In this document: positions 10,673-31,828 of the stretch, piece after piece
Numbering within the stretch: position 1 is the first letter of the stretch
Layout of the letters: each line of letters begins with the position of its first letter
Source of the DNA: Setoptus koraiensis
Taxonomy: Eukaryota; Animalia; Arthropoda
Assembly: GCA_048013815.1 (NCBI GenBank)
Contig: CM106585.1
Span: forward strand, 2,108,001 to 2,172,000
Length of the DNA stretch: 64,000 bases
Reading direction: 5' to 3'
The notes under the pieces: model-generated
Database searches by the model: none
Seen by the model: only the letters and a program-made list of their open reading frames with translations
Told to the model about the DNA's origin: nothing
Position numbers and translations under genes: made by a program

Positions 10673-11671
10673 ATGGCTTCAACTAAAAAGTGTTTGTCAA
10701 TTGTTGGATTATTAGCTCTGACAATAGTACAAATTGGAGCCGCTACGAAGATCGTTTTAACTCAACCAATACAACAAGTACAACCAGCTCCACAGCCAAT
10801 TCAACCAGCTCCACAACCAATTCCGCCACCACCACAGCCACAGAGAGAAACTTATCCTACTAAACAACAACCTCAAATAGTACAGCAACAACTGAGAACG
10901 GTTCCCGAAGAACCTGCATTTGGTTGGCCATCAGCACCAGTCGAGCACAATAGAGATGTCGCGTTCGAAGGAAAGACGAGCCCCGCTGGCACTAAAACAG
11001 TTCAAAGTTCAGAATTCAGAGAGAACCTTTTGCCTCCACAACAACCACGACAATATCCACAATTCACAATGGTTTGTCCCGAGGCAACAAGTTTGTTGAC
11101 TAAAATTAAATTCGCGCTGCAACAACTCATTGAGAAGGCCTCATTGAAGAAGAAGTTGTTGAAACAAAAGAAACCAATCGCCGTCCCAGTTCCGGTGCCA
11201 GTTGCAGTACCAGTGAAATCTGAGCCAAAATATCTGACCTTCACTAAAACCTACAAAGCACCAATTTTTATCGAGGAATCCGTGCGTCAATATGCTCCAC
11301 CACAGCAATATGAAGTTTTGGAGCCTGTCGAGAAATTCAGTAAGATAAAGCTATTATCCGATAAGTTTGCCAAAACATATTATCAGCAACCATCGCAGTT
11401 ACATCAGTTGCACCAACAACAATTCCATGAGCAACAACAACAGCAGCAACATCAATTCATTCAACAGCAACGCGAACAAGATTCATTCAAACCGATCGAA
11501 CAACAACAAGAACTAAGTAACTTTAAACAAGTAGAACAACAACAAGAGCAGATTCCTTTTAAACAATCAGAGCAACAACAGCAATCACAACAGGATGAGC
11601 TACTGGATGATGATATAAGAGGTGCGGGAGTCAAAGATCGCGATTCTGAACAACAAGCCAGAGAAAGATAA
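10673..11671 (+). CDS. Secreted Pro/Gln-rich low-complexity protein (cuticle/secretory type), 332 aa
   Basis: Signal-peptide-like N-terminus (MASTKKCLSIVGLLALTIVQIGAA), QPAPQP repeats, KKKLLKQKK-PIAVPVPVPVAVPV block, poly-Q tail. Intronless; AATAAA near 11842. Confidence 0.8.
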   Translation: MASTKKCLSIVGLLALTIVQIGAATKIVLTQPIQQVQPAPQPIQPAPQPIPPPPQPQRETYPTKQQPQIVQQQLRTVPEEPAFGWPSAPVEHNRDVAFEGKTSPAGTKTVQSSEFRENLLPPQQPRQYPQFTMVCPEATSLLTKIKFALQQLIEKASLKKKLLKQKKPIAVPVPVPVAVPVKSEPKYLTFTKTYKAPIFIEESVRQYAPPQQYEVLEPVEKFSKIKLLSDKFAKTYYQQPSQLHQLHQQQFHEQQQQQQHQFIQQQREQDSFKPIEQQQELSNFKQVEQQQEQIPFKQSEQQQQSQQDELLDDDIRGAGVKDRDSEQQARER

Positions 11672-12824
11672 CTAAATAGATTGACTATTGCTATTGACAA
11701 TTATTGATTATTATCACTGTTACATCACAGATATTATATTAATATTATTATTATTATCGTATTGAGCATAAGAATGTCCTGTCGAGGGGACTGGCGCCAA
11801 ATCCGCACTGAATGTAAACCTTGAATCTATATCTACTCTCAATAAATAATCTACCAGTTGCGTACTATGTCTGCTTTGATTGCATGTTCATGAATGGTGC
11901 AACTGCATGTGATTCGAATGGTATCGATTTCATCAAAAGAATAATAAAGTTTGATTGGCGAGTCCAGTGACCAATCGCGTTTTTTAATTCGAACTGATGA
12001 GAGCTATATGCACTTTTGAGTACCTTGCCCGTTCTAGAGGAAGGGCGAACTCCTCTTTAGTTTTTTCTGGTTTGGTTCAGTAATTATGGTTGAATCAAGA
12101 TCAATTTATTTTTAGAGTTCCGTTGAGTGGAATACTCGCATCAGATTGTAATATATTAGGCAGATACTATCAGTCAACAGATATTGGTAAATGTTTTTGT
12201 TTATTGGTCTATTTTGATCATATACAATCTTGTTGTTTACTTCGATGTTCGACAAAAATTATCACTTTCGCTCTTGAAACTGCCTTAGTATGCATAGGGA
12301 TAGATAGTAGCCGAGAAATTCAGTTGGTGATTGGAATCTCCTTTGGGGATAAAAAACTTTTCAAGAGTTTTGTCTCTCTTTCTATTATATGATTGCACTG
12401 GTCATGCCAACGGGTTAATTTCTTTCATCAGATTGTAGAGAAAAGTGATCTGTAAATAGAACACACTTGCCAAAGATAATTCGTAAAAATGACAATAAAA
12501 CTAAGTAGATTATAAAGTTGGAGTGTTTGTGAGTGTCTTAGGTTACTCCTTGAAGATGTCAGAGCTCATTGGTAGGAAATGCGTGTAGACGGCGATCCAT
12601 TCAATCAAGGCCCACAAAATTTAGTTAGTATAACCATAAAACAAAGTTTCCGTCTCAAAATTAACAATCGTGTACAGTCTAAATAAGGAATAATAATACA
12701 TACATGTGTGTACTGTAATACTCATCAATAATAATAATAATATATAGTAAAAATTATAATAATAACACTACCAGAAGCTGGCACTTCAACTACAGCGGAA
12801 TACGTTGCATTGTTTTACATCTGC

Positions 12825-14255
12825 CTATTCTGGTTTAGGTAAATCTTCAGCTACTAACTCTAACAAGTGTTGGTTAGCCTTTCGATAATATTCAGCTTGG
12901 GCTCGTATGAAGTTCTTCAAGTATGTCACATGCTCATTAGTAGAGCTGATAACTTTCTCACAAATAGTAGATACTAGAGCCACTTGACGATCGAACTCTC
13001 CCTGAGCGTTACGAAGTTCATGTTCAGCCTGTACAGTATTGAATAAGGATTATGTCGAAAATTAGTTAGATCATGGGTACATATGTGATCGTGAATTTTT
13101 GCTTTCACAGCGATCATATCACAAACATAGAACAGTTTTATCAGTTAGCTAGAAACAGCAATATAGAGAGACGTATTATATGGGGTAAGCTTTACCTCTT
13201 GTATTTCTTTGACTATCTGATCAAAAGTTTGCTGATGTTGTTAGTGAGTATAGTATATGTAGCAAGTTTAGTAAAAACATTTTTGGATTGAGATCACAGT
13301 GAGATGTGAGTGAAGAACAATTACATGAAGTCCAGAGAAGTAGAGCAAGATGAACTAAACACAAAGCCTACGTGTTTAGCAATAACAACTAAATGAATAC
13401 GTACATTTGTTGGATTTTCATTAGATCTGACTTTCTTATACTTGCTTTTGGCGGCGTCAAGATCTAACCGTTTAACTTCCAAAGAACGCCTTTCTCTCTG
13501 ATAATGGAAATATATTTATACGTTAGTAGATCGTTGTCAACATTATTGCATCGATTAGTCTAAGGGGTCAGTGATTTAAACCTGATACTTACTACAAGCG
13601 CTTTGACTTCATTATTGAGAAAAAATTTAAGTGGCCTGATGAAATCCATGTAAGCTTTTGCGACAAAATCACGTTCTTCTTGGCCCAGCTTCAATTGTAC
13701 TTGACCGGCGCTAATCAAGGCACTTCCATATACATCCCCTGGCGAGAGTTCGGTTCCGGCACTAACCATCTCACTACCCATTAGTTCCAGATTACGAAGT
13801 CTATCTTTTCGCTTGTCTGATTCGCCAAGCTTCTCCATCAAATAGTCTTCTACTCGATTACCTGTTCGCGTAACATGTCAGGAAATAAAGACAAAGTAGT
13901 TAGTACAGAGTAATCAATTATAAGATCATTAACACACAATAATGAGTTACATACTTGGATTAGGTTGCAACATTGACTCAGCTGATGCCACTATCTTCTC
14001 TGTCCATAGTTTAGTTTGGTCCGCACGCGTTAACAAATTCTCGAAATAGCCATCTAGTTCTGTTTTTTCACTTGTACCTAGTCGTTCCTCCGTGAACTGT
14101 AAACACAAGAAATTGCATAATGTTGCTTTTCAGTTCTCTACAACGACCTAGTATTATTATATTCATCAATGTGAGTCACTCACCTGTTTAGCTCTAGTCA
14201 GCGCTGTCGAGGCCTCGGCAGCAAAACCTTTGAGTCCCTTGAATGAGAAGTCCAT
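12825..14255 (-). CDS. EndoB: Endophilin B (N-BAR), 5 exons, ends without an SH3 domain
   Basis: Exons 14255-14184, 14096-13955, 13861-13593, ~13497-13405 and ~13028-12825 joined at GT-AG sites. Reads MDFSFKGLKGFAAEASTALTRAKQFTEERLGTSEKTELD...LQPNPSNRVED...YGSALI...RLDLDAAKSK...AEHELRNAQGEFDRQ...AQAEYYRKANQHLLELVAEDLPKPE*, typical of the SH3GLB BAR domain. Confidence 0.88.
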
Positions 14256-15102: not shown

Positions 15103-15618
15103 ATGCCTCGCTGCAATCTGACATTGAAACAAAAATGTCAGATAATAGCGCTGAAAGATAAACTACCGACGAAGGATCTAGCAAAAAAATTCCATGTTCA
15201 TCTGTCAACTATAAGCAGGATAATTAAAAATCAGCAGCAAATTCTCAATGTTGCCACCCGAATCAATCTAAATCACAAGAAAACCACAAGTTACGATTAT
15301 GAATTAGACGGGCTTGTTTTGGAATTCATCAAGACACATCAGGAGGAGTCTAAATCACTGAGTGTGAAAGACATTTGCGCAAAAGCTACGGAATTTTCAA
15401 CGACGCTTGGACGCCAGATTACTTGTAAGGGGTCCTGGTGGAGGAGGTTCAGGCAAAGATGCAAAATAATAAAAACTAGACAATCTACTAGTATTACCAA
15501 CAGCCGTAAAAGCAGTCAATCACAACAAAACAATGAAAATTCGGCTAAAAAGGAACCATCGTCGAAAGAGCGGTGTACCATATTCAAGATAAGAGAGGAG
15601 AGAATACCGAAATATTAA
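15103..15618 (+). CDS. CENP-B/Tigger(pogo)-type DNA-binding protein, two HTH domains, no DDE transposase domain
   Basis: psq-type HTH (LTLKQKCQII...KDLAKKFHVHLSTISRIIKN) followed by a CENP-B/Tc5-type HTH (ELDGLVLEFI...ICAKATEF...GSWWRRFRQR), then a short basic tail and stop. No flanking TIRs seen. Confidence 0.78.
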   Translation: MPRCNLTLKQKCQIIALKDKLPTKDLAKKFHVHLSTISRIIKNQQQILNVATRINLNHKKTTSYDYELDGLVLEFIKTHQEESKSLSVKDICAKATEFSTTLGRQITCKGSWWRRFRQRCKIIKTRQSTSITNSRKSSQSQQNNENSAKKEPSSKERCTIFKIREERIPKY

Positions 15619-17577: not shown

Positions 17578-18231
17578 ATGAGACACGAGTTTGGACGTAA
17601 CACTAACAACGGTAACAACACTGATTTACAAAATGATGCCGACTCTGAGGGATGTAGGCGACAGTCAATGCTGAAATTAAATGATGTAAAAGTACCGCAA
17701 GGTGAAAATGAGAACGAATGGTTGGCCATCAACACATTTGATTTTTTCAATCAAGTTGGAATGCTCTACGGAATAATAGCAGAAAATTGCACTAACGATA
17801 CATGCCCGACAATGTCGGCTGGCACTGGTACTGAATATCGCTGGATAGATGTTGATGGAAGCCGAGGGCCTATTAAATACAACGCAAAACAGTATGTTAA
17901 TCATCTTATGAATTGGGTCGAACAGTGCCTGAACGACGAGAGATTATTTCCTACAAAGTGCGACCCCACTGATTTTCCTGATTTTCCCGATAATTTCAGA
18001 AATGAATGTAAGATCATCTTCAAACGTTTTTTTCGCGTCTATGCACATGTTTATCACCACCACATAGATCAAGTGAAAGATTTCAATGCCGATGCTCATA
18101 TGAATACTAGTTTTAGGCAATTTATATATTTTGTCAGAGAGTTCCAATTGATTGAAGATCGTGAATTAACACCACTCAATGATCTTATAGCAAAACTGTG
18201 TCCTATTCGACAAAACCAATCAACAAACTAA
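17578..18231 (+). CDS. MOB1/Mats-like kinase activator with divergent N-terminus
   Basis: PQGENENEWLAINTFDFFNQVGMLYG, CPTMSAG, LFPTK, KRFFRVYAHVYHHH, AHMNTSF..FIYFVREFQLI..REL.PL form a MOB core. FFNQ..MLYG is MOB1-type. The true start may lie in an upstream exon (frame open back to an AG at 17527-17528). Confidence 0.85.
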   Translation: MRHEFGRNTNNGNNTDLQNDADSEGCRRQSMLKLNDVKVPQGENENEWLAINTFDFFNQVGMLYGIIAENCTNDTCPTMSAGTGTEYRWIDVDGSRGPIKYNAKQYVNHLMNWVEQCLNDERLFPTKCDPTDFPDFPDNFRNECKIIFKRFFRVYAHVYHHHIDQVKDFNADAHMNTSFRQFIYFVREFQLIEDRELTPLNDLIAKLCPIRQNQSTN

Positions 18232-19426: not shown

Positions 19427-22400
19427 TTAGTACATTTTGTGACCATTTGTAAGTGTCATATCACTATAGTTATCAAAGTCACTGCTATTACTTAGTCCAT
19501 TATTACTAGATTGGAGATTTGCGCTGCTAGTTCCATTGTTAATGGAGAGATAGCAAGGTGGTTGTTGCTGTTGTTGTTGTTGTTGTTGTTGTTGTTGCTG
19601 CTGCTGCAATCTGAGGGTACGGGCGGGCGGTGGTGGTTGTTGCTGCATCTGCTGCTGCATGTGCTGCTTCAAATTGAGCTGCTGTTGATTGAGACGGGAT
19701 TCTCGAGGTTTGGGTACAATTAGATGAGGCCTCGATCCTTGAGGAACTGGGTTATCTAGTGATACGGTTCTGAAATGAGCTCCCGGCGATGGTTGCATAT
19801 TCGCTGACTTTCCTACAAGAACTCTGTTAGATCCGCCGAACGTCGTCGCCGTCGACGCGGTACTTATGCCGCTAACCGCAGATTGTTGACTTATAGCTGA
19901 CTGTAGAATCATAGGGTGCTGCGATCCAGACAGCTGATGATGATTACCAGTTGAAGAGCTTAAAGTCGATGCCATAAGATTTGTACTAAAATTGGATGCA
20001 TGGTTGACGTGTCCACCGTACATGAGATGGCTTGCACTTAATGTTGGTCCGTGGTCGCTACCATTGCATGCTGTGTTTGATTGAAGATCAGAATTCGACA
20101 TCGAAGATGCCTGAAGTTGACGCTGTTGGTCCATGTCGTGTTGATGACGCTGGAAATGATCGGGGTACTGTTGCTGTTGCATCTGATTGTTGAAAGAATT
20201 TTGTTGATGTTGTTGCTGCTGCTGCTGAGAAAGTAAACCAGATGTTGCAGCGGATAGTTGGGTGGGTGTTAGGCTGCTGTTCGATTGTAACATTTGTTTT
20301 AGATGTAACACTGAACTTTCACCACTTGGTGTATGTCTATGATGATAATAATGATGACTTCTTCCCATTGACCCGTTATGGGGATTTGTGTCAAGATTGC
20401 CAATGCTACCAGAATTACTTCGATGTCCAGTTGTGCCGGTATTGTAGAGGTAGCTAGGTTTTTTCTTTTCTCTTGAATTTATTTTCAAGAAACTGAAAGT
20501 TATGATAATCAGTATGATGATAAAGAAAGTGATAACCACTACGATACCTATAGACATTGGATCATTGGGAGGTATCGACGATTGAGGTTGATCAAGACTA
20601 TTCGTTGATATCACCAAATTGAGCGAAAGTGGTGGTTGATTGACACCATCGGATACTGATATCAACAGGTCGTAAGGAGAAACTTTCAACTTAGCGAATG
20701 GCTCCAACACGTAAATCTTGCCACTTTCCTTTTCTATCATAAAATGTCCATTGCATGAATAGCATGCAGTCATCGTGTATTCAAGAGACGAATTCAAATC
20801 TTGATCATAAACTATTCTGGATACGTCATAAATCATTGATCCAGAAGCCACACTGTCATTAAGAGCTAGATACATAACATTTTTGTATTCAGGCAGCAAC
20901 TGAGGCGGACAATCGTTGACATCCAATACAGATATCTCTACCACTATGAGATGGTTGCTGACTCTATTTTGGATTATTGTCACAATTTCCAGATTGTATT
21001 TATCCTGCTTTTCTCTATCAAGAAAACCATTCTCGGAGAGAGTCAGTTTACCTGTGTTGCTGTCAATAGTGAAAGGTCGATCAGTTTCGTTAACAAGAAG
21101 AAAGTTGCAACCTTCGGGACCTGATAGACTTAGGGATGAGTACTGGGAACTCGATCTCACTAGAGATGAAGGAGAATCCATCCTACCATGATGAGAAAGA
21201 CGCATAACCGGTGGCAACTCTGTTGGCCAGTAGGGTGAATCTGATTGAAAAGCTTGCTGATGCTCCATGCTAGAACCGAAGTCGCAATCTAGTTTAGTCA
21301 CTAAGAATCCGGGAGCTTCGTTTTCCTTGATTTCAAACCTTAATGGAGGATTCAATCCATTATGATCATTCAATCTATTTATAATGATGAATTGTATGTT
21401 AATATGCGTAGACAATTGTCCCCCATCTATCGCAGAAATACGAACTTTCTTAGTCATTTGGCTGTCGAAATATCTTTTAGCTCGAACTTGTCCAGTGGCC
21501 GAGTCTAATTGCAACAAATTAGTAATGTCTGAATATTCTGAATCCATTCTGTATGTAATAGTACTGTTAAACCCATAATCTGGATCAATGGCCTTAATAG
21601 TGCCTAATAATTGATTGGGTTCCAAAGAACCGATATGTACAATTGAGCTTGATGATACGAATTTTGGTGGATTATCATTAATATCATCTATCAAAATGTT
21701 AACATGTATTGTGTCGGTATTTCCAGCTCCATCTCGAGCTTCTAGAGATATCAAAACGCTGGTGGTATTTTCTCTATCTATCGATACTGCAGTTCTTAAT
21801 ATCCCTGTGTCGCTATCAATTTTGATTGGACAATCGAGACCTTTGCCTGGGTTGGGATCGTTCTGGGATTGATCCTGCTGCTGAAACGAATTTTCTAATT
21901 GGTGCTGACCGAAGGTTTCCTCTACGCATGAGGACACCTTGTATGTCAAAATATCGTGTTCGTCGCAATCCACAGCAGATACCGTTAGAATTTTACTGTT
22001 GATGGGTAAGTTCTCTGGGATGTTTATCGTTAGTGCTTGAGGTGACTTGAATTTGGGTGAACACTCGTTAACTTTCACAACCAAATATGCAGTTGAAGAT
22101 CGCGGCGGATTTCCGTGATCTCTTGCAACAATAGTGAGATTGTATTTGGACTGCTTGTGACGATCTAATTGACCATTGACTTGGATCATGTGTGAAAACT
22201 TAGTGCTAACCAGTTTGAAATGTCCATGCTCATTACCCTTCTCAATTGATATACTTGTTTCACCATTTTGGCCTTGATCGTCATCTATAACTGTCACTGC
22301 AGCAACTAGACTTCCATTTTGTGCTCGTTTCTCGTCGACTATTGCGAAGCCACTTTTGGAGAATGATTTAAATTCTATTCTAGGATCATGATGATTGTTG

Positions 22401-23821
22401 TCATTTGTGAAATGTACAGTTACATATGCCCTTCCAGATTGTTGTGGCGAACCATTGTCGCGAGCGGCTATAGTGAGAACACAAACGTTACTAGTTATTG
22501 CAGATGCCTGGGAGGATGGCTGCTGATAATTGTTGCTCGCTGATATTTGCTCATAGGCGGCACCGGATGTGAGATGTGATAATGGATCGGCCATTATTTT
22601 ATTATCTGATGTTGTGTATATAGATGATATAGATCTAACTTGGGGCGACTGACAATGCAAGGGGCCGTCAACATTTTTCGTAATGATGCCGGTATCTGGG
22701 TCTATTTTGAAGAGTTGAGTCGGTTGATCTATATAATAATTAACACGGGAATTGTCAGTGTATGGGGCGTCTGCATCATTTGCTTGAACTTGTATGATTG
22801 TGTCGCCTTTTGATAGATTTTCATTAACTCTAACACTGTAATGATTTTGTTCGAATTGAGGGGCCTGATCGTTGACATCCAAAACATCGATGGTGATGGT
22901 TTGATAGGCTCTCTGGTTTCCGTCATCATAGGCGGATATGTTGAGCACGTAACGACTCTGCATTTCGCGATCTAACGGTTCAACAACTTCCAATTGAAGT
23001 AAAAAGTTGCTAGATGAATTGTCATAACTCAATTTAAATGGACCACCATTACCGGCTGAAGTACGCTGTTGTTGCATAGATGTTGGCCTCGAATTCAAGC
23101 GGGCATTCGCTAGCTGTTGTTTAACTGTAAGTTGCTGTTTTGTTGTCGCTTGATCATTGTTGGCATTGTTGTTGTTGAGAGTAGATAAAATCTCATAATT
23201 TAATGTTCCCTCATCTAGATCTTGTGCCGAATCTAGCATCAGCCTGGTGCCTATAGGAGCGGCTTCGCTAATATTAAATTCATGATGTGATTCGGACCAT
23301 TGTGGTTTGTTGTCATTAACATCTAGAACTCTTATCTGAACGTTGATGGGTGCCGATGACAATGATGACAACACAATTAAATTGTATGTATCATTGACTT
23401 CTCTATCTAGTTTGGCGTGCGTGGTGAATATAAAACCCGATGTGGGATCAATGTAGAATTGTGGTATTTGTTCGAAGAATCGAAAGGTCACTTTAGGGGA
23501 GGTGTTTTGTTGGAGTAGATTGTTGGCTAGATTGGCCCCCTGAGAATTTATTGACGGTTGCAGAGCGGCCGATGTTGGATTGTTCAGTGGCGATTGTTTG
23601 ATTCGGCCAACAATAGTTTCAAATTCACTATTTTCTGGCACAGAGAATACATAATTGGTTGCAGTATTGTTGTTATTAGCACCATGTTGTTGCAGCGCTG
23701 GCTTGTTGTTGTCGGATGTTGTTTGGGGCGAGCTAATTGCACAGCTAGCGATAACAACAAGCGAGCCTATGAGGCATAACAACAAGTGCGAATTTGTGGC
23801 AGGATGATAATATGTGAACAT
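19427..23821 (-). CDS. ft: Fat-like atypical cadherin, intronless, ~8 cadherin repeats plus TM, 1464 aa
   Basis: Signal peptide; linkers LDVNDNKP, LDVNDQAP, DDINDNPP, LDVNDCPP. The first repeats follow Fat in order (LDRE..DTYNLIVLSS; GTRLMLDSAQD; CVLTIAARDNGSPQQSGRAYVTV; VAAVTVIDDDQGQNGETSISIEKGNEHGHFKL; LDR..QSKYNLTIVARDHGNPPRSSTA). TM helix near 20490-20555; Q/S/H-rich cytoplasmic tail. Confidence 0.8.
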   Translation of the reverse strand: MFTYYHPATNSHLLLCLIGSLVVIASCAISSPQTTSDNNKPALQQHGANNNNTATNYVFSVPENSEFETIVGRIKQSPLNNPTSAALQPSINSQGANLANNLLQQNTSPKVTFRFFEQIPQFYIDPTSGFIFTTHAKLDREVNDTYNLIVLSSLSSAPINVQIRVLDVNDNKPQWSESHHEFNISEAAPIGTRLMLDSAQDLDEGTLNYEILSTLNNNNANNDQATTKQQLTVKQQLANARLNSRPTSMQQQRTSAGNGGPFKLSYDNSSSNFLLQLEVVEPLDREMQSRYVLNISAYDDGNQRAYQTITIDVLDVNDQAPQFEQNHYSVRVNENLSKGDTIIQVQANDADAPYTDNSRVNYYIDQPTQLFKIDPDTGIITKNVDGPLHCQSPQVRSISSIYTTSDNKIMADPLSHLTSGAAYEQISASNNYQQPSSQASAITSNVCVLTIAARDNGSPQQSGRAYVTVHFTNDNNHHDPRIEFKSFSKSGFAIVDEKRAQNGSLVAAVTVIDDDQGQNGETSISIEKGNEHGHFKLVSTKFSHMIQVNGQLDRHKQSKYNLTIVARDHGNPPRSSTAYLVVKVNECSPKFKSPQALTINIPENLPINSKILTVSAVDCDEHDILTYKVSSCVEETFGQHQLENSFQQQDQSQNDPNPGKGLDCPIKIDSDTGILRTAVSIDRENTTSVLISLEARDGAGNTDTIHVNILIDDINDNPPKFVSSSSIVHIGSLEPNQLLGTIKAIDPDYGFNSTITYRMDSEYSDITNLLQLDSATGQVRAKRYFDSQMTKKVRISAIDGGQLSTHINIQFIIINRLNDHNGLNPPLRFEIKENEAPGFLVTKLDCDFGSSMEHQQAFQSDSPYWPTELPPVMRLSHHGRMDSPSSLVRSSSQYSSLSLSGPEGCNFLLVNETDRPFTIDSNTGKLTLSENGFLDREKQDKYNLEIVTIIQNRVSNHLIVVEISVLDVNDCPPQLLPEYKNVMYLALNDSVASGSMIYDVSRIVYDQDLNSSLEYTMTACYSCNGHFMIEKESGKIYVLEPFAKLKVSPYDLLISVSDGVNQPPLSLNLVISTNSLDQPQSSIPPNDPMSIGIVVVITFFIIILIIITFSFLKINSREKKKPSYLYNTGTTGHRSNSGSIGNLDTNPHNGSMGRSHHYYHHRHTPSGESSVLHLKQMLQSNSSLTPTQLSAATSGLLSQQQQQQHQQNSFNNQMQQQQYPDHFQRHQHDMDQQRQLQASSMSNSDLQSNTACNGSDHGPTLSASHLMYGGHVNHASNFSTNLMASTLSSSTGNHHQLSGSQHPMILQSAISQQSAVSGISTASTATTFGGSNRVLVGKSANMQPSPGAHFRTVSLDNPVPQGSRPHLIVPKPRESRLNQQQLNLKQHMQQQMQQQPPPPARTLRLQQQQQQQQQQQQQQQPPCYLSINNGTSSANLQSSNNGLSNSSDFDNYSDMTLTNGHKMY

Positions 23822-24848
23822 TTTGTGATTTGTGGTTGTTGTTGTTGTTGCTATGTTGTGGTATTGATTTCAAATTCAATATTACATGTACGATGATGGC
23901 TAAACTAGTGCTGCGGTTGTTGTTGTTGTTGCTGCGATGAGCAGTTGCTGTTGTGCTTCAATTGTTGTTTCCACACTAATAATCATGATTAATTAATCTT
24001 GTTATGTGAATGTAATGTAAATGGCGATAATATTTAATATCAACAGGACGATATTGATATTAAATATAAAAGGAGAAAATAACAATTCTCTACGGCTGGC
24101 CCAACGATGAATGTCCAGAGAATGCGCGTCGAACTGTTGCTCGCGTCGCGGTAGAATTTTTTGCTCCCTCTCTGTACCACTGCTACTTGTGCTGCCGCTG
24201 CTGCTGATGCTGTGTGTGTGTGTGTGTGTGTCTGAAGCCTGCACAAACGCGCACAGATTAGAATTAAACGGCACAGGATTGTTGTTGTTCGATGAGCGAT
24301 TCAAGATGAAGAAGCAGAGCGAGACCAATGAGCATCCCTCTGGCTGCTAGAGTCTACTGCTAGAGCAACACCAACAATGCTGCTGCTGCTGCCGCGATGC
24401 GATGCGTCGTCGTTCTATTCAGTGCCCTTCGCACTGCTTGCTGCCATTGCCAGCGCCACAGCACTATATTGTGTGTGCGTTCGACGATTTATAGCTTCAT
24501 CAGCTCATCATCGCGCATGCTATCGAATCGTTTTTGTTTGCCCGTTTGTCCGTGCGAGCGTGCACTTTACTCCGCTGCCATCCCCACACTGTATGCCGGC
24601 CGATAGTAGTGGCATCTCTGCAAGCCAGCACCACTAACGCAGCGTTAGCGAGTGCTGGCAGCGCGCACAAGCACAGGCATTCAACAGGCTTCTTCTTCTT
24701 CTTATCTCGTGTGTCTGTGCCTTTGTGCGTTCCTCCCCCCGCTCTCGAGTGCGGCCCCCGGGAGCGCACACCAGCGCTCTTATCGAGCGTATTATTGGTC
24801 ATCCTCATTCTTTGTTCACACACACACACACACACACACGCACTGGCA

Positions 24849-24903
24849 CTGCGAGCGAACTGTGAGCGAACTGCGAGCGAACCGCGAGCGAACTGCGAGC
24901 GAA
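24849..24903. repeat. 11-bp tandem array CTGCGAGCGAA x5
   Basis: Five near-identical units, ~1 kb upstream of the Fat-like ATG, close to a GA repeat at ~25010. Confidence 0.9.
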
Positions 24904-26704
24904 CTGTAAGCTCCTCCGAGAGAAGCGCCATGAGACACACACACACACGGTTCGGTACAGAGTAGCGGAGAGCGCAGAATCGCAGAGCGGACAGCCAGCG
25001 AGTGAGTGAGAGAGAGAGAGAGAGAGCGAGGCAAAAATAGAATAGCCATAAGCACGCACTTCAGCGACCGAGGCTCAGTTTGCATATGCGCTCGTTGTGC
25101 CGGTTTTGCTTCATTTGCTCACGCTGGCGCTACTAGCAAATAAAATAGATTGCTGCAATACCTCAATCGATGGCCATTCGCAGAGGGCATCACCAATTAG
25201 ATGCCCCCACCAACACTAAGGTACCGATACACTGTGGCACCACTCGTGCAAGTATCGTACGAGTGCCAACGCTGACCCGTAGCCAGTCGCTGGCTGCCAG
25301 TGTGAGCGATAGAGAGCGCGATAAAAGAATAATATTGAAGTGTGATGTGAATTTTGATGATGATTATTCTCTGCTCCGTCCAATGGTGCAGCGGCGCACA
25401 CACACACTGCAGTCCAGTGACTGGACAGTGCAACTGGTCGTCATTTGGTGCGTCGCATCAGTGGTGCGTTGGGCAGCCTACGTGCATCATTAATGCACAA
25501 GCGCAAAGAACGAGCAGCAGCAGCAGCACCACAGTGCACCATATCAGCCTGAATCAAACCATAGCAGCAGCAGCAGCAGCATTGGCGTGGTGTGTGCAGC
25601 ATTGAGCGAACAGAAGCACCAGCAACAGCAACAACAACAACAGCGGCACCGGCAACAGCAACGACACACGCAGCATATGCTGCCCAAAATGGCAAAATGG
25701 GAGAACGTATAGAATAGATTAGGAAGAAACAAAATGCCTATTCCACACTGCTGACCATTGGCGGCCATTAATAGAAGAGGCTTCGCTATTTTGGCCATGG
25801 TCGTCGTCGTCGTCGTCGTCATCATTTAAAAGCGCAAATTTTATTTTCAACCTGACGATCATTGCACACACGGCGCGATACGGAGTGATACTGTTATATC
25901 GTGGTGGCGGTGGTCGGGGCAGCAGTCGTAGGCCGGCGCAAAGAACGCCACACAGTCGCATAGCGAACACAACACGACTACTCGGTTTGGCATTGCAAAC
26001 TTGTTATAACTTGCCCCAAAGTGCCGCTGTTGCACTATTTGCCTAGTGGACACACGCGACACACACACACACACACACACAGTTGCCCAAATCGATGATG
26101 CTATTTAAATTTGATTAATACTGTCCCCTGACATTGACTACGATCGTCGTAGCTACGATCGTCGTAGCGGGCCCACGGCCGCTGATAGACTGCTGCTAAC
26201 AAGCTCTGTTGTAAGCAGCAACAGTTTGTTTGGATTGTCACTTATGCCACAGCGACATGAATAGAAGGGGGGACACTCAATGGTGCGTAGCCACTCTGCG
26301 CCATCGTCGCATTACACTGGCAGTGTTATGCTGGCACAGTGACTGCGCTGCGCCAGTGACAGTGCAATGGTAGTAAAGACTAGTTGTGCGTGTTAATCGC
26401 ATCAATTAATGAACAACAACAACAACAACAACAACAATAACGACATCAACAAGACGCTAATGGTGTAAATGGCCGCTCGGCATTTTGTGTGCAACAGCGA
26501 CCAGCCAGCGTATACAAACACACACACACACACACACTGGCTCGCTCACGGCTGGCTGGCCATAAATAGATGGAGATGAATTTGAGCAATCTGTAACAAG
26601 AGATTGTTATTAATTGTTTGTAGTTTTATCTGTTGCTTGCTGCACGCTGTTTGCTTTCGTTGTTGCTGCTCACCACACACTTGTGCTGCCGGCATAATGT
26701 TGCC

Positions 26705-26739
<35 letters not shown>

Positions 26740-29157
26740 TTGTGTGTGTAAGCAAACCAGCGCATGCCCACTGGTGGCGACGGTGAGCAAATTAACAAGT
26801 GAGCCAGTCGCAACTTGTTGCTCTGCTCGCGCACTGACCGCACAAAGGTGAGCGGCTGCACGAGCGTGCACTCCGCATACACAAGACACTGTATCTTGTG
26901 TGCACCAGGTAGAGAGCCAGCACAAAGCTTATCTAATATCACCGCTTCTGACCTGTGTACGTGCTTACGCTGTTGGCCTCTATGCGCCGCGCTATGATGA
27001 GCCGGTTTTGCTGGCGGCCACCGGCCCGAGCTCGACAGCATACAGCATCGGATATAGCATGCTGCTGTGTTGTGCACGGTGGTTTACCTGGCGCGGTGTG
27101 TTGGCTTATTATCAGGCGGGCGCATTGGCGCATTAGTTGGGTGGGTTGGTCATGAGCATGAGTTTTAATTATCGAATGCAAACACGACTGACCACACGAC
27201 TATTAGCGGTTTGTGTCTAGTCGTTTGATTGCACTTTGTTTATTATTACCATTATTATTAATGTTAAATACGTGCCCGCGCGCTCTGGCCTGCACACACG
27301 GCCGATGTAAGCAAGGTAAGCAAGGTAAATGGGCACTATCGGTATCGGTTTGGTTGGTTGTGTTCTTTTGTTCGATGTGCCCTGCTCTCGATGCGCTCAA
27401 CACGCTCAGCGCGTTCCGTGCCCTTGATGCGCGCCTCACACCGCATGCACACCAATATATACCCACTGTGGGCGCAATGTGGCCACGACAAACAATCACG
27501 ACTATTCAATCTATACAACGACAGGCAGCCAGTGTGATGGCGAGCAGCATTGTTGCATCACCACTGGTTCATATATTCATATTCCACACACACTTTCATC
27601 GCAAATCGCAAATCGCATATCGAGGTTGTTGCTGTTGCATCATGCTGCCGATTGGGCCGACCATCGTTAGCCACGCCAACGAAACCTGGCCGTGCCACTT
27701 ACTGCGTCACTTGGTGCTTGTTGGCCGCAGAGCGCGGTGTTGCGACTCAAACGAGCGGTTGGTGTCACGCGTGCGCAACATCTATCGCACCGGTCATCTC
27801 GTGGCGTGGTCAGCGTCGATCTCGTGGCGCGGTCACCGGTGAGCGGCGCTACTTGACACTTTGGCCAGCGTCGCAAAATTATACAAAATATAATATATTT
27901 ATGCAATGTTATTCGGCGGCCGGCCGATCTGGTTGCTGGCATCGCTCGCATAATGCGAGTCGCACTCAATCTTGTTTGGCGATCTTGTGGCTCTGTTGGT
28001 CGCATGCATTATTTGCTGCCTGGTTGTCGGGCCACCGCGAGATTCACCTGATGATACGCTCAGCACACCACATCCATGTGTATTTATGCGCTGCTGCGAG
28101 TCGATTTGCTACAGACTCGCGGCCCGTCCCTTGCTGACCATCAGTCGCGGCCCGTCGATTGCTGACCAGCCGCTGACCAGCCGCCGACCGGCCAGAGAGC
28201 GGCGCTAAATGGAACAAAACACGCAATCCAGATTGATGACACCACCACTATTGCGCTTGTCATCATGTGAATGGACAGGCCGCCACCACCGCCGCCGCTG
28301 CTGCTGTTGTGTTGATTTAATCTATAAATTATCGACGATGACATGTGAATAGTGGCGCACACAGAGACAGACAATTTTAGAAAAATAAACGCATTTGAAT
28401 ATTTCGACATGATGAATGCTGAGCGACCATCACGCGGCTCTCAACTCTCGTCGCTAATATCCCCGAAAATGCCTCTAATATCTCTAATATCGCACGCCAG
28501 TATCGCTCGCTAATGATATCCGAACGCGCTCTGTTGCCGTGTGTGTGTGTGTGTGTGTTGTGTGAACAGCGTGACCGCTATTAACGTCTAATTGAACTCA
28601 ACTTGAATGGCACTTCAATTAGACTGGCCTCTCAAGTTAGCCTCAGCACGAAAGTTAAATAATGCTGCTGCCACCAGCAGACAAGGCGCAGTGTTGGGTG
28701 TAGTGGTTGGCCGATGTTGCAATGTTGGCTGCCAACAACAATTCTCTTTCTTCGCTCTTGTGCCATTCCGATTCATTCAAGTGGCCGCCGTCGCATATTA
28801 TTATTATTATTTATCTGCTCGCCATTTAGCCGCGCGCTGTGTCCCGTCGCAGTCACCACGCCGCAGTCACCACGCCGCAGTGTGTCCAGCGCCAGTGTGT
28901 GTTGCAACTTTGGCCGTGGCCAACAGTGTGCGTTCACCTGGTGCGTTCGCCAGGTGAAGAGCCCACTGTGCAGCGTCGCTCACCGGGGACCACACACCAG
29001 TATGCGCCACTTGCCGGCCACTGGACATAGGTGGTCGTTGCGCGCACTGTGCTCAGGTAACTTATTGGCGATCGCAAGCATCATGCAAATCATTTAGGAT
29101 GGGCATCGCCGCAAGTGTGCTAGTGTCAATTCGTTTAACGGCTTGTCCCGTCCGCCG

Positions 29158-29238
29158 GCCGTGTCTCGTTGCGGGTCGTGTCTAGTTGCTGGCCGTGTCT
29201 AGTTGCGGGCCGTGTCTCGTTGCGGGCCGTGTCTCGTT
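29158..29238. repeat. 17-bp tandem array GCCGTGTCT(C/A)GTTGCGG x~5
   Basis: Units at 29158, 29175, 29192, 29209 and 29226 (partial). Confidence 0.9.
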
Positions 29239-31828
29239 AGCCGGCCGTGGCCACAAACGACAGCGCGCTGACCACAGCGATCGAACTGGAAGGGCGTGAC
29301 ACCCGCCTGCCCAGCGCATGGATCGACGGTGCGTCCAACAATATTCATGCCACGAATTTCATGGGCCGCGCGGGTCGGGCAGCCAGTGGGCAAGCAGTCG
29401 GCAGCTCGCCGGTGGCGAGCGAACCTGCGAGCAATTGTCGATCATCATTTCGGCACTCATTTGCATATCGACGATTCGAATTGTAAATTGAATATCGAGC
29501 TGTGTTTAAATATCGCAATTGTGCTCAAATATCGCAATTGTGTGTGCGTGTATCTGCGGCTGACCGATCGATCATAATCGATCAAGTTGCATCACAGGTG
29601 CGCGCCACTCTGCTGACACTTGATGCAGCAAGTGCAAACAGATGCTGACTGTGACAGCCAACTGTTGATGCCTGGCCCAGTCACCGGGTGGCAAGGTGAG
29701 CGCCGCCAGTGCGCCAGGCCGCATCATGGGAACCGGCGCGATATAGAGATATTATCAGCGTTGGCATGAGCCATTGTTGTCAGTTCCGGATAGCTGCCGG
29801 CAGTTCCGGACAATGGCTCGCTGAGCCGTACGCTGCCACAGTGATCCAATGGGGTCCCCAACCCAATGGCGGCTCCTTGGTGCCCCGATTGTGCCCCGAT
29901 TGTGCGCTGACTATTGTGCACGAGCACAACTGCACCACTGACAACTGCAACTGTGCTCCAAGAGCGCCGGCCATAACAATTGAATCGAAGTGTGCACCTT
30001 CGAAATTCGAATTCGCCCAGCGGTGCCCATTGTTGGCCGCCAACAACAACATTAATGTTTACACGTGCATTGTTGGCCTGGTCTGACGTCGGTGGCGTTC
30101 GACGCCAGTGGCCGGCCAACGCTGGTCACCAGTGAGCACTGGTCACCGGTTGCTCGTGGCATGCAACCAGTGACCAGTGACCAGTGCTCACCGGCGCTGC
30201 GAGTCAAGTAACGGCGAGCGGCGATATATCAAAGCGCCCCATTATGTGCAACGTCCGACAGTGGGCCGCTGACAGTGGCCCACTGACAGTATGCCACGGA
30301 CAAAGAATGAATTGATTTGAGCGGCCAATTCGCGGCCCGATGCGCCCGTTCCGAGCAGAATGTGGCGCCCCTTGCAGTGGGCGCCAGTTGCCGATACGGC
30401 CGGCCCGTGGTGACGGGCATTGTCACGGGCCACATTGGCTGTCAGTGTGGCCAATGCGCCCGAAAGCGGACGGCACCACAAGCAAGTGGCCGGCCGGTGT
30501 GCGCGAGCGTGCGGCACAACTGGTCGCGCGCACCAATCACGCTCGCTCTCACAACAATCGGCGCCCCAAACACCCATGATGGCACACCAATTGTCACTTT
30601 TGTTTGCGTCAATTATTTGCCTTGACAGCCATATATAATATTTCGCACGAGCAGGCCCCATCGGCGATTGGGTAAGCTGAGCGCTAAGCGTTGAGCCATT
30701 GTTCGGGCCTTCCGCTCACAGGCGTGGGCCTTTTGGCGAGCAAATACGCTCGCACAATGCGCACAAAATGCCCGCTATCGGCTGCCGTCATAATCCGACG
30801 GCCGATAGCAGGCACCTAGCATCGTGCGGGTGAGCCACAATGGGCCTCAGGAATTCGCTCTCTCCGGCGCATGAGTCGCACCATGAGAATGTGGGGCCGG
30901 CCACGGAAGCCAATCCCCGAAGCTTTGCGCTGCATGCCTCTGCAGTGTGCCGGCTTTGTGCCAGCTTTGTGCCGGATCTGTGCCGGCCCTGCGCCGGCTT
31001 TGTGCGTTTCCTTTGACGCACGCGAGGCACCAGTGACAACAGCGGCGGCCGGTTTGTTGGGCTGGTCAAGCCGGCGAGCAAACACGCTGTCAGACGGGCC
31101 AGACTGGCTGACGGTCGACCGGTCAGCTGTCGCTTGTCGTGGTGTGGGCGACAAGTTCCGGCCTGGCGCTGTCAGCGGCTCGCCGGTTGACCCCTCGCGA
31201 GTCGCGACACTGTTCGCGACACTGGCCGTGTGGCGTGCAAAGCGCGCAAACCGGCCGCTGCGGCCCAACGCGAACGGAGATAATAATAATCGGCGACATT
31301 CCTCGGCTGCTTTCGATTGTCCAGCGACCGGTTGACAGCCCGACCAGCCCAAACGGCCGAAATAATGGAAGCGGCCGGAGCGGCCGAAATGGCGTGGGCC
31401 TGACGGATAACAGACAGTTGTAATGATGATATTTTGGCACACACGCCAAACGCCAAACGCATTCATTTAATCTAATATTTGTCTAATATTTGTCCGGCGC
31501 GTCGTTGTGGTCAGCGCGGCGAGAGTCAGACTCTGACTGTAAGAGCGAGAGTGTGATGTTTGTGTTTGGTTGACGGCACAAGTCATTTAGCGGCTGGTCA
31601 TCGTGCGCGCGTCACTTGCTCAAGCCGAGCCAACGTGCGAGCGCTGCCATCGTGGCTTCATTTTAACAATCACCGATCGCACTGATGAGTGATTGAAGTG
31701 CCAAACTGCTGCAACAATCAACACCAATTGTTACCATGCCACGCCCATCGCATATTAGTTTTAGCGGGGGCCACCAACGATAACCGTTATCAGCAGCAAT
31801 CGTTTAGCCAACTGGCCGCACTGTGCGC

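What the first reader, a model, noticed from the sequence alone, without database searches (positions are those of the whole stretch)
19427..23821. Miniaturised, intronless Fat cadherin: ~8 repeats instead of 34, no EGF/LamG
Seen: a complete 1464-aa ORF with signal peptide, ~8 cadherin repeats, TM and tail. Established: Fat/FAT4 have 34 cadherin repeats plus EGF and laminin-G modules (~5000 aa), bind Dachsous via the most N-terminal repeats, and restrain tissue growth through Hippo. The first ~5 repeats follow Fat in order (from recalled Drosophila sequence), so the ligand-binding end is kept while ~70% of the protein is missing. Inference: a streamlined growth-control receptor in a miniaturised animal. 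It could span only a narrow cell gap unless Dachsous compensates.
Basis: partly seen in the sequence, partly recalled or inferred. Interest (0 to 1): 0.75.

Follow-up and report, generated by a model that had tools for sequence, protein, structure and literature searches.

The report
Shrunken Fat cadherin of a mite
This mite gene descends from the giant cell-polarity and growth receptor Fat but keeps only 8 of its 34 repeats, including the end that grips its partner Dachsous, which makes it a natural test of why Fat is normally so large.

Summary
Window 19427-23821 (minus strand) is one intact 1464-aa ORF with a signal-peptide-like start, eight cadherin domains, one transmembrane helix and a 350-aa Gln/Ser-rich tail.

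By descent it is Fat (ft/FAT4):
- Repeats 1-4 match Fat EC1-4 in register and sit in a 100/99-supported clade with five acariform mite Fat proteins, inside Fat/Fat4.
- AU tests reject grouping with Kugelei/Fat1-3 (p 0.02) and with Dachsous (p 0.004).
- The 'DPMSIG' juxtamembrane segment plus helix occurs only in Fat proteins of my set.

Repeats 5-8 are not Fat EC5-8. They correspond to Fat EC14-17, shown through sarcoptiform mite Fat proteins and shared derived cysteines. The architecture is therefore EC1-4 + EC14-17 + TM.

Lost parts are EC5-13, EC18-34 (with the second Dachsous-binding site, CAD26-27), EGF/LamG, and almost all conserved tail blocks, including the Expanded-binding region E and EEYV. 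Only a doubtful relic of the EHYDLENASSIAPSDID block remains.

The Dachsous-binding role is plausible. Canonical Hippo signalling is doubtful.

Sarcoptes Fat (3736 aa) also lacks EGF/LamG, so the reduction looks stepwise.

Not settled: no RNA data exist, and a second 'Mini-Fat' noted by the scan elsewhere in this genome (s1-321340) could not be examined. A published eriophyoid genome paper reported that fat could not be identified.

The parts
19427..23821 (-). Complete single-ORF gene, 1464 aa plus stop: reduced Fat (ft/FAT4) orthologue
23729..23821 (-). Residues 1-31: signal-peptide-like N-terminus (hydrophobic core 13-31)
   Evidence: hydropathy; sequence
23306..23674 (-). EC1 (aa 50-172) = Fat EC1, with a disordered insert at about aa 80-107
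   Evidence: FatEC01 HMM 64 bits vs 40 for the next; AF2
22862..23305 (-). EC2 (aa 173-320) = Fat EC2, with an Asn/Gln-rich insert at about aa 219-256
22376..22861 (-). EC3 (aa 321-482) = Fat EC3, with an insert at about aa 394-443. The Four-jointed motif position is Asn (DVNDQAPQFEQN)
   Evidence: FatEC03 98 vs 61 bits; motif definition from PMC9935876
22037..22375 (-). EC4 (aa 483-595) = Fat EC4, the best conserved repeat (50-59% identity to arthropod Fat EC4)
   Evidence: 124 vs 65 bits
22022..22075 (-). Junction 1 (aa 583-600, 'VVKVNECSPKF'): EC4 joined in phase to EC14. The canonical Ca-binding linker is degraded (DRE to DRH at 553-555; DVNDHEP to KVNECSP). 'CSP.F' resembles the mite EC13/14 linker DVNDCSPIF
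21668..22036 (-). EC5 (aa 596-718) = Fat EC14. Three cysteines (DCD..SC..DC) are shared with sarcoptiform mite Fat EC14; insert at aa 639-661
21362..21667 (-). EC6 (aa 719-820) = Fat EC15, which ends without a DxNDN linker, as Fat EC15 does
20906..21361 (-). EC7 (aa 821-972) = Fat EC16, with a Ser-rich insert at aa 850-902 and a cysteine pair shared with mite Fat
20594..20905 (-). EC8 (aa 973-1076) = Fat EC17, membrane-proximal. Its C..C pair is shared with Sarcoptes EC17
   Evidence: best BLAST hit is EC17 in Sarcoptes, Tachypleus, Ixodes and Drosophila Fat
20480..20563 (-). Junction 2 plus Fat-type juxtamembrane motif DPMSIG and TM helix (aa 1087-1114)
   Evidence: the motif is found in 8 of 291 cadherins, all Fat
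19430..20479 (-). Cytoplasmic tail (aa 1115-1464): 16% Gln, 15% Ser, no Pfam family, no canonical Fat ICD blocks, no EEYV end
20081..20167 (-). Possible relic of the Fat ICD core block: YPDHF..DMD..ASSMSNSDL (aa 1219-1247) against YPEHYDLENASSIAPSDID
   Evidence: shuffle p 0.0003-0.02 depending on gap costs; p 0.008 for the second half alone; BLAST E 0.9. Suggestive only

Best explanation
The gene is the mite's orthologue of Fat (Drosophila ft, vertebrate FAT4), cut down by two in-phase internal deletions.

What remains (shown):
- Fat EC1-4, joined at a repeat boundary to Fat EC14-17.
- EC17 joined directly to Fat's own juxtamembrane/TM segment.

What is gone (shown):
- EC5-13 and EC18-34, which include the second Dachsous-binding site CAD26-27.
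- The EGF and laminin-G modules.
- Nearly all conserved cytoplasmic blocks.

How it most likely works (inferred):
- It sits in the plasma membrane and binds Dachsous on the neighbouring cell through the antiparallel EC1-4:EC1-4 handshake known from Fat4-Dchs1.
- EC14-17 serve as a stalk of about four domains.
- The EC4/EC14 joint has lost its calcium-binding residues and probably acts as a hinge.
- The tail lacks the Expanded-binding region E, the other conserved regions and the EEYV end. Any output to Hippo/Dachs must therefore be weak, rewired or absent.
- The protein is more likely a polarity/adhesion partner of Dachsous than a canonical growth-control receptor.
For: - EC1-4 hits: in-register hits to the N-termini of named Fat proteins. 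Mites score 295-337 bits at 39-42% identity; Drosophila, Ixodes, Tachypleus and Centruroides 248-272 bits; Fat4 of deuterostomes 175-218; Dachsous 123-144 (names).
- EC-specific HMMs from seven canonical Fat proteins assign query EC1-4 to FatEC01-04. On whole repeats the margins are 24, 7, 37 and 59 bits; EC2, which the insert splits, has the small margin.
- ML tree: the query lies in a 100/99 clade with five mite Fat proteins inside Fat/Fat4. AU tests reject query+Kug/Fat1-3 (p 0.021) and query+Ds (p 0.004).
- Conserved columns: 93 of 110 columns that are near-invariant in other Fat EC1-4 are kept. The best PDB fold match is 8egw_B, Fat4 EC1-4 bound to Dchs1.
- EC5-7: they map to residues ~1430-1800 of five sarcoptiform-type Fat ORFs at 124-161 bits, against at most 61 bits anywhere else in the same proteins. 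In Sarcoptes, that region's first two repeats are FatEC14 and FatEC15 by HMM; the third (1712-1813) scores best against FatEC23 and is taken as EC16 from its position and the linker pattern.
- Drosophila Fat's best HSP for query EC5-8 is 1502-1918, which is EC14-17.
- EC8's best hit is EC17 in four species.
- The linker pattern canonical / non-canonical / canonical and the shared derived cysteines agree with this mapping.
- The DPMSIG+TM segment is Fat-specific in my set.
- The ORF is intact in three run assemblies, with 5 synonymous to 1 non-synonymous differences.
- Literature: FtCAD1-4 alone on a foreign TM binds Ds (PMC11497213); Fat4 EC1-4:Dchs1 EC1-4 form an antiparallel complex (PMC9935876).
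Against: - No transcript evidence.
- No close (eriophyoid) relative was found, so conservation of the two junctions is untested.
- Direct mapping of EC5-8 onto canonical Fat repeats is ambiguous. The EC14-17 assignment leans on the mite intermediates.
- The tail shows no significant similarity to Fat tails, so part of the orthologue's function may be gone.
- A second 'Mini-Fat' with LamG-TM is noted elsewhere in this genome (s1-321340) and could not be examined. It might be the signalling copy.
- Binding to Dachsous is inferred, not shown.
- The query branch is long: 1.1 changes per column.
Confidence: 0.7

Rival explanations
1. It is one of two Fat-derived genes produced by duplication or fission of ft. 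This copy keeps the ligand-binding head. The other ('Mini-Fat' with internal repeats, LamG and TM, on the other chromosome) keeps the signalling parts. Together they would divide Fat's functions.
For: - Scan note s1-321340 (unchecked) reports a second Fat-like gene with about 8 internal repeats and LamG-TM.
- This gene's tail has lost the conserved blocks, which is what one would expect if signalling were carried elsewhere.
Against: - This gene keeps Fat's own TM/juxtamembrane segment, so it is not just an N-terminal fragment.
- Arthropods normally have a second Fat-family gene, kugelei/Fat2, with LamG/EGF. The other gene could simply be that.
- Sarcoptes Fat has no LamG either.
Confidence: 0.15
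2. It is a decaying remnant of ft on its way to loss, still open by chance or recently inactivated in function. This would fit the published view that the Fat/Dachs/Four-jointed branch is lost in eriophyoid mites.
For: - PMC7738191 reports no fat orthologue, no dachs and no four-jointed in Aculops lycopersici.
- The branch is long.
- The tail is degenerate.
- Low-complexity inserts sit in five repeats.
- There is no RNA evidence.
Against: - A 4.4-kb ORF without a stop is very unlikely without selection.
- Both deletions are exactly in phase with domain boundaries.
- 85% of Fat-invariant EC1-4 columns are kept.
- All eight domains fold confidently.
- Five of six differences between the assemblies are synonymous.
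Confidence: 0.08
3. It is not Fat at all but a member of another cadherin family (Dachsous, Kugelei/Fat1-3, Flamingo/CELSR, Cadherin-23 or a protocadherin) whose repeats merely resemble Fat.
For: - Whole-protein PDB and database searches rank CELSR1, protocadherins and Cadherin-23 highly, because scores add up over generic repeats.
Against: - Those hits are out of register. Only Fat hits start at the N-terminus and reach 240-337 bits.
- The tree and AU tests reject this.
- The TM motif is Fat-specific.
- EC-specific HMMs point to Fat EC1-4.
Confidence: 0.02

Closest known systems
Fat (Drosophila ft) / vertebrate FAT4
   Same: - EC1-4 are orthologous and in register; EC14-17 are retained.
- Same DP(L/M)SIG juxtamembrane segment and TM.
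- Type I topology.
- Best fold match is Fat4 EC1-4.
   Different: - 8 instead of 34 cadherin repeats.
- No EGF or laminin-G modules.
- No CAD26-27 second Ds-binding site.
- No conserved ICD regions (at most a relic of one) and no EEYV.
- 1464 aa against about 5000 aa.
- Single exon.
Fat of other acariform mites (Sarcoptes scabiei UXI15942.1, 3736 aa; Leptotrombidium deliense RWS28683.1; unnamed Logan/ENA ORFs P0001, P0018, P0222, P0477, P0487)
   Same: - Sister clade in the EC1-4 tree (100/99).
- Derived cysteines shared in EC14, EC16 and EC17.
- Sarcoptes also lacks EGF/LamG and the C-terminal ICD blocks, and has Asn at the EC3 Four-jointed position.
   Different: - They still carry roughly 26-28 repeats where complete (Sarcoptes, P0222), including EC26-28.
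- Sarcoptes keeps ICD blocks RPDI.., EHYDLENASSIAPSDIDIVYHYKG and ..ILTLQD.S.
- Leptotrombidium seems to have deleted a different internal block: EC5 to about EC17.
Engineered Ft[CAD1-4] on a CD2 transmembrane domain (Strutt et al. 2024, PMC11497213)
   Same: A Fat head of four repeats on a short stalk. In S2 cells this is sufficient to bind Dachsous in trans. The mite protein is a natural counterpart.
   Different: - A natural gene with four extra stalk repeats and Fat's own TM.
- In flies the CAD26-30 site mattered more in vivo than CAD1-4, and the mite protein lacks that site.
Clustered and delta protocadherins (works like, not a member)
   Same: - Similar size: 6-7 repeats against 8.
- Single large exon, type I topology.
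- Trans binding through an antiparallel EC1-4 overlap, the mode that Fat4-Dchs1 resembles (PMC9935876).
- High fold similarity.
   Different: - Protocadherins bind homophilically.
- By sequence the query's EC1-4 belong to Fat.
- No protocadherin cytoplasmic motifs were found.
Dachsous
   Same: Its EC1-4 are the next most similar in register (123-144 bits); it lacks EGF/LamG.
   Different: - Separate, well supported clade; the AU test rejects grouping (p 0.004).
- The TM motif and EC14-17 signatures are Fat's.

Membership tests
Fat / FAT4 (ft) orthologue group | N-terminal EC1-4 orthologous to Fat EC1-4, in register (the Dachsous-binding module) | tested here: met
Fat / FAT4 (ft) orthologue group | 34 cadherin repeats | tested here: not met
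   8 repeats, corresponding to EC1-4 and EC14-17
Fat / FAT4 (ft) orthologue group | EGF-like and laminin-G modules between the repeats and the membrane | tested here: not met
   None by Pfam. The positive control, Ixodes Fat, shows LamG x2 plus EGF. Sarcoptes Fat also lacks them
Fat / FAT4 (ft) orthologue group | Fat-type juxtamembrane/TM segment (DP[LM]SIG followed by the helix) | tested here: met
   8 of 291 cadherins carry the motif, all of them Fat
Fat / FAT4 (ft) orthologue group | Conserved cytoplasmic regions A-F, including EHYDLENASSIAPSDIDIVYHYKG, the Expanded-binding region E (LLNWGP..VGVFKDI) and C-terminal EEYV | tested here: not met
   ICD profile score is -5.6 for the whole tail and -13.6 for its one domain. 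Block tests were all non-significant except a partial relic. Region E function is from PMC10120405
Fat / FAT4 (ft) orthologue group | Second Dachsous-binding site in CAD26-27 | tested here: not met
   No repeat maps to EC26-28, whereas Sarcoptes, P0222 and Leptotrombidium keep them. The site is defined in PMC11497213
Fat / FAT4 (ft) orthologue group | Heterophilic binding to Dachsous | not testable with these tools
   Needs a cell aggregation or ITC assay, or a complex model with the mite Ds sequence, which I did not have
Fat / FAT4 (ft) orthologue group | It is the only ft-type gene of the genome (one-to-one orthology) | not testable with these tools
   Only this window is readable. Scan note s1-321340 reports another Fat-like gene. 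PMC7738191 found no fat orthologue in a related species
Kugelei / Fat1-3 (Fat-like) | EC1-4 group with Kug/Fat1-3 | tested here: not met
   Kug/Fat1-3 form a separate 100/100 clade; AU p 0.021
Dachsous | EC1-4 group with Ds/Dchs | tested here: not met
   Ds/Dchs form a separate 99/99 clade; AU p 0.004

The most novel reading that the evidence does not exclude
This mite runs a natural minimal Fat-Dachsous system. Fat is reduced to the EC1-4 head on a four-repeat stalk. Dachsous is reportedly reduced to EC1-4 (unchecked scan note). The system would lack the second binding site, the Four-jointed site in Fat EC3, the Expanded-binding tail region and, as reported for a related species, Dachs and Four-jointed themselves. 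If it still polarises or sizes tissues, the N-terminal handshake alone is sufficient. The other 26 repeats, EGF/LamG and most of the tail would then be dispensable for a core function, and a new downstream link must exist.
Probability: 0.35. Interest if true: 0.8.

Novelty: new variant of a known kind. Interest (0 to 1): 0.62.

Why it matters
Fat and Dachsous are among the largest cell-surface proteins of animals, and why they need 34 and 27 repeats is an open question. Recent fly work found two separate binding sites and could only guess at the role of the remaining repeats (PMC11497213).

Here evolution has done the deletion experiment. A Fat that keeps the first binding site, four middle repeats and its own membrane anchor has stayed open and looks selectively constrained. 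Its relatives in other mites show intermediate stages.

It also revises a published inference. [quoted passage not shown] At least in this mite the gene is present but too short and too diverged for orthogroup methods to pick up easily.

The loss of the tail blocks that bind Expanded makes a testable prediction: the Fat-to-Hippo link is broken or rewired in these animals.

Tried and rejected
1. Close relatives. All three word-index protein searches (whole ectodomain, aa 440-1130, aa 596-1125) found nothing closer than 42% identity. Exact look-ups of this protein and of the neighbouring Mob1 protein, tried as a synteny handle, are not on record. Conservation of the junctions in other eriophyoid mites is therefore untested.

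2. Transcript evidence. No RNA run holds the stretch. The three runs are DNA-like contigs, and their 'joints' are CAG-repeat artefacts.

3. Direct assignment of EC5-8 with HMMs of canonical Fat repeats. This was ambiguous: EC15 tied with EC20 for repeat 6 and there was no clear winner for repeats 5, 7 and 8. The reading 'collinear EC5-8', suggested by long BLAST HSPs, was rejected. The same mite proteins score 124-161 bits at EC14-16 against at most 61 bits at EC5-8, and the linker pattern and cysteines fit EC14-17.

4. Alignment A1, which mixed EC1-4 and EC14-17 fragments, was misaligned by MAFFT and was not used for modelling.

5. Residue-by-residue mapping of the published Fat4 interface residues (Leu379 and others). 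The PDB alignment to 8egw_B was not printed and I did not want to number from memory. I report only domain-level conservation.

6. Tail against the Fat ICD profile and by BLAST: not significant. The relic motif is offered as suggestive only. Its p-value depends on gap costs, and the motif ends were chosen after I had seen the match.

7. The supplement of PMC7738191, searched for orthogroup membership, was uninformative.

8. The representative-library search is dominated by giant cadherins because scores sum over repeats. I used it only as a source of full-length references.

Full report
OBSERVATION

The window holds one ORF at 19427-23821 on the minus strand. It is 1464 aa long with an ATG start. 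Hydropathy finds two hydrophobic segments: residues 13-31, which look like a signal peptide, and 1091-1109.

Pfam reports seven Cadherin stretches (E 3.7e-72) and the FAT4-like N-terminal cadherin domain. It reports no EGF or laminin-G.

AlphaFold2 models built on alignments of homologues show four beta-sandwich domains in residues 45-595 (mean pLDDT 77, 252 residues at 90 or above). They show four more in residues 590-1090, followed by a helix at 1091-1114. Confidence is low only in five low-complexity inserts, at about 80-107, 219-256, 394-443, 639-661 and 850-902. Foldseek matches both halves to four-domain cadherin crystal structures. The count of eight repeats, one TM and a 350-aa tail is therefore right.

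Contigs of three public runs carry the same DNA. Of six substitutions inside the CDS, five are synonymous and one is M249V, inside an insert. Length differences are multiples of three. No RNA run holds the stretch, so the single-exon transcript is unconfirmed. The 'joints' sit on CAG/CAA repeats and are assembly artefacts.

The neighbours are a Mob1-family gene on the other strand (17578-18231) and an SGF29 gene. No ORF nearby has EGF or LamG.

WHICH CADHERIN IS IT?

Whole-protein searches are misleading because scores add up over generic repeats. CELSR1, protocadherins, Cadherin-23 and every giant cadherin score well.

The first word search had a length filter. Its top hits were 1720-1810-aa proteins called 'cadherin-related tumor suppressor-like', which is UniProt's name for Drosophila Fat. 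These end without a TM, so they are N-terminal fragments of Fat gene models.

I took full-length references from the representative library and named them by cluster look-ups. With these, the query's first four repeats (aa 50-595) hit in register at the N-terminus:
- acariform mite Fat proteins: 295-337 bits, 39-42% identity (Leptotrombidium deliense, Sarcoptes scabiei, three unnamed ORFs);
- Fat of Drosophila, Ixodes, Tachypleus and Centruroides: 248-272 bits;
- Fat4-like proteins of amphioxus and a crinoid: 199-218 bits;
- Dachsous/Dchs1/Dchs2: only 123-144 bits;
- everything else is out of register.

HMMs built for each of the 34 repeats from seven canonical Fat proteins assign query EC1, 2, 3 and 4 to FatEC01-04. 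The scores are 64 vs 40, 58 vs 52, 98 vs 61 and 124 vs 65 bits.

An ML tree of EC1-4 (LG+C20+F+G4) puts the query in a 100/99 clade with the five mite Fat proteins, inside arthropod Fat. Dachsous (99/99) and Kugelei/Fat1-3 (100/100) form separate clades. AU tests reject query+Kug/Fat1-3 (p 0.021) and query+Ds (p 0.004).

The query keeps 93 of the 110 columns that are near-invariant in 19 other Fat EC1-4 sequences. That is 85%, the same range as deuterostome Fat4 (82-87%). The best PDB fold match of the EC1-4 model is 8egw_B, human Fat4 EC1-4 in complex with Dchs1 (E 2e-39).

The segment 'NDPMSIGIVVVITFFIIILII' matches the juxtamembrane/TM segment of Fat: Sarcoptes TDPMSIGVMVILFFFIILIL, Tachypleus TDPLSIGVILVIVFFIILIV, Drosophila ADPLSIGFTLVIVFFVILVV. 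The motif DP[LMIV]S[IV]G occurs in 8 of 291 collected cadherins, and all eight are Fat. Both ends of the ectodomain are therefore Fat's.

WHAT ARE REPEATS 5-8?

They are not Fat EC5-8. In five sarcoptiform-type Fat ORFs (P0001, P0018, P0278 = Sarcoptes, P0477, P0487) the query's aa 596-975 align to residues ~1430-1800. The scores are 124-161 bits at 29-32% identity. No other place in the same proteins exceeds 61 bits.

In Sarcoptes Fat that region's first two repeats are FatEC14 and FatEC15 by the canonical HMMs. The third repeat (1712-1813) scores best against FatEC23, so I call it EC16 from its position between EC15 and EC17 and from the linker pattern, not from the HMM. It is followed by EC17.

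Canonical Fat proteins have a fixed pattern of linkers. EC14 ends with DxNDN, EC15 does not, and EC16 does. The query's repeats 5, 6 and 7 show the same pattern (DINDNPP / none / DVNDCPP). The collinear alternative EC5, 6, 7 would predict canonical / canonical / none.

Drosophila Fat's best HSP for the query's repeats 5-8 is 1502-1918, which is EC14-17. The best hit of repeat 8 alone is EC17 in Sarcoptes (51 vs 31 bits), Tachypleus, Ixodes and Drosophila.

The alignment of aa 590-1125 with EC14-17 of mites and canonical Fat (A2) has 29 invariant columns. It also shows derived cysteines shared only by the query and the mite proteins:
- DCD..SC..(N/D)C in EC14;
- C...GC in EC16;
- C..C in EC17.

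I take EC5-8 = EC14-17 as well supported, at roughly 85%. The direct signal against non-mite Fat is weak.

THE TWO JUNCTIONS

Junction 1 reads 'YLVVKVNECSPKFKSPQ'. The left side is the end of EC4. 'CSP.F' resembles the EC13/14 linker of the mite relatives (P0001 'DVNDCSPIF', Sarcoptes 'DINDCHPMF') rather than their EC4/5 linker ('DHNDHSPKF').

The calcium-binding residues around this joint are the main losses among Fat-invariant columns: DRE to DRH at 553-555, and DVNDHEP to KVNECSP. It is probably a calcium-free hinge (inference). A deletion between two copies of the repeated linker motif would explain why the domain phase is preserved (inference).

Junction 2 runs from the end of EC17 ('LNLVISTNSLDQPQSSIPPN') straight into DPMSIG and the helix.

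THE TAIL

Canonical Fat/Fat4 tails share these strong blocks:
- RPDIIERE;
- EHYDLENASSIAPSDIDIVYHYKG;
- ARLSPS..PRILTLQDISGKP;
- GLTAEEIERLN;
- NDSFTCSEFEYD;
- LLNWGPNF..LVGVFKDI;
- EEYV.

Sarcoptes keeps the first three. The query's tail scores -5.6 against the profile of canonical tails (-13.6 for its one aligned domain). It gives no BLAST hit to any collected cadherin. It ends ...NGHKMY.

Block-by-block tests against shuffles are non-significant, apart from a borderline RPDIIERE match (p 0.04) in the wrong order and QASSMSNSDLQ (p 0.008, uncorrected). PDHF lies 17 residues upstream of it (p 0.06).

A gapped local alignment to YPEHYDLENASSIAPSDID gives YPDHF-----DMD-----ASSMSNSDL. The shuffle p is 0.0003-0.02 depending on gap costs. 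BLAST against the Drosophila tail finds the same pairing at E 0.9. I read this as a possible relic, split by Gln-rich inserts, and not as proof.

The block LLNWGP..VGVFKDI lies in the C-terminal residues 64-25 of fly Fat. This is the conserved region E, which binds Expanded directly and is needed to restrain Dachs and Dlish (PMC10120405). It is absent here and in Sarcoptes.

CONTEXT IN MITES

- Ixodes Fat (a parasitiform tick) has two LamG and several EGF domains. Sarcoptes Fat (3736 aa, with TM and tail) has none by Pfam.
- Sarcoptes and P0222 keep about 26-28 repeats.
- The partial Leptotrombidium model goes from EC4 to an EC18-like repeat. This suggests a different internal deletion, with the caveat that it is a draft gene model.
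- All three keep EC26-28 with high scores. That is the second Dachsous-binding site found in flies and humans (FtCAD26-27 with DsCAD17-22; PMC11497213). The query has nothing that maps there.
- The Four-jointed motif D-X-N-D-X7-S/T in EC3 (PMC9935876) ends in Asn in the query (DVNDQAPQFEQN) and in Sarcoptes, and in Pro in P0222. It ends in Ser in the other mites and arthropods compared, and in both Fat4 sequences.

THE ORGANISM

I infer an acariform mite from several lines:
- the tree places the query with acariform mites;
- earlier scan notes call this genome a mite;
- the genome comes in two pieces;
- the window is compact and intron-poor.

This fits an eriophyoid mite such as the two-chromosome 34.5-Mb assembly described in PMC11879100. 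I did not verify the species.

[quoted passage not shown] It also states that dachs and four-jointed are absent while dachsous is present (PMC7738191). No paper in the searchable library links eriophyoid mites with a reduced Fat.

HOW IT PROBABLY WORKS

Shown: a secreted-type N-terminus, eight folded cadherin domains, a TM, Fat ancestry at both ends, and a conserved EC1-4.

Established elsewhere:
- Fat4 EC1-4 and Dchs1 EC1-4 bind head-to-tail with high affinity, and Fat EC4 contributes the critical hydrophobic contact.
- Fly FtCAD1-4 on a foreign TM is sufficient to bind Ds in cell aggregation.

Inferred:
- The mite protein binds Dachsous of the neighbouring cell through EC1-4. EC4 is its best conserved repeat (50-59% identity).
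- EC14-17 act as a stalk.
- If Dachsous really is reduced to EC1-4 (scan note s1-345627, not checked by me), the trans complex would span about eight repeats (8 + 4 - 4). That equals a clustered-protocadherin trans dimer (6 + 6 - 4), so a narrow gap is no obstacle.
- The tail cannot use the known Expanded/Dachs route. Output is absent, weak or new.

RIVALS

- Duplication or fission with the other 'Mini-Fat' (s1-321340) as the signalling half: 0.15. That gene may simply be kugelei.
- A decaying relic: 0.08. Argued against by the open 4.4-kb frame, the in-phase deletions, the conserved columns and the 5:1 synonymous differences.
- Another cadherin family: 0.02. Rejected by the tests above.

VERDICT

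It is corrected on the identity of repeats 5-8 and not supported on Hippo growth control.

By descent this is ft. By architecture it fails most defining features of the Fat family. I classify it as a new variant of a known kind, of real interest to people who work on Fat-Dachsous, pending expression data and a look at the rest of the genome.

The scan noted this same stretch once (s1-338107). It also noted a different Fat-like gene on the other piece.

Noticed in passing
window 17578-18231 (+): A Mob1/phocein-family gene (Pfam E 1.5e-63) lies 1.2 kb from the 3' end of the Fat gene, tail to tail. Mats/Mob1 is a core Hippo-pathway component, so a Hippo-pathway gene sits beside ft. This is probably coincidence. 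Also flagged by the scan as s1-338190.
   Followed up: partly
window 20198-20228 and 23916-23934: Short CAG/CAA (poly-Gln) repeats. One lies inside the Fat tail and the other about 100 bp upstream of the Fat start codon. Both attract hundreds of unrelated contigs and create false 'joints' that skip about 3.69 kb in read laying. Logan contigs of the runs break at such repeats.
   Followed up: yes
window 44827-48549 (+): A 1240-aa ORF for a His/Gln/Glu-rich protein (12% His) with an N-terminal hydrophobic segment and no Pfam family. It lies in a stretch with GC 0.58 and AT skew 0.47.
   Followed up: partly
window 24000-42000: GC content jumps from 0.38-0.41 (in 16-24 kb, which includes the Fat gene) to 0.47-0.59 for about 18 kb. 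That stretch has only short overlapping ORFs on both strands. I did not explain it.
   Followed up: no
window 15103-15618 (+): A 171-aa ORF with a CENP-B N-terminal/HTH DNA-binding domain (pogo/Tigger-type transposase remnant or a domesticated gene).
   Followed up: no
L001 (ENA ERZ25067524 contig, 13.6 kb), 3681-13634: An AT-rich mite contig carries a Fat gene as three consecutive ORFs (1811 + 976 + 339 aa, cadherin repeats throughout, running off the contig end). This is the nearest relative of the query by tree path length.
   Followed up: partly
P0219 (Leptotrombidium deliense RWS28683.1), P0222, P0278 (Sarcoptes): Acariform Fat proteins appear to have lost different internal repeat blocks in different lineages. 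Leptotrombidium goes from EC4 to an EC18-like repeat. Sarcoptes and P0222 have about 26-28 repeats. Sarcoptes has no EGF/LamG and no C-terminal tail blocks or EEYV. Gene-model errors are not excluded for the draft genomes.
   Followed up: partly
P0105 / P0431 (Bolinopsis microptera 'protein dachsous-like', 1323-1363 aa): A ctenophore cadherin with nine repeats, one TM and a C-terminal ...DSYV groups at the base of the Dachsous clade in the EC1-4 tree. It is another naturally short member of the Fat/Ds world.
   Followed up: no
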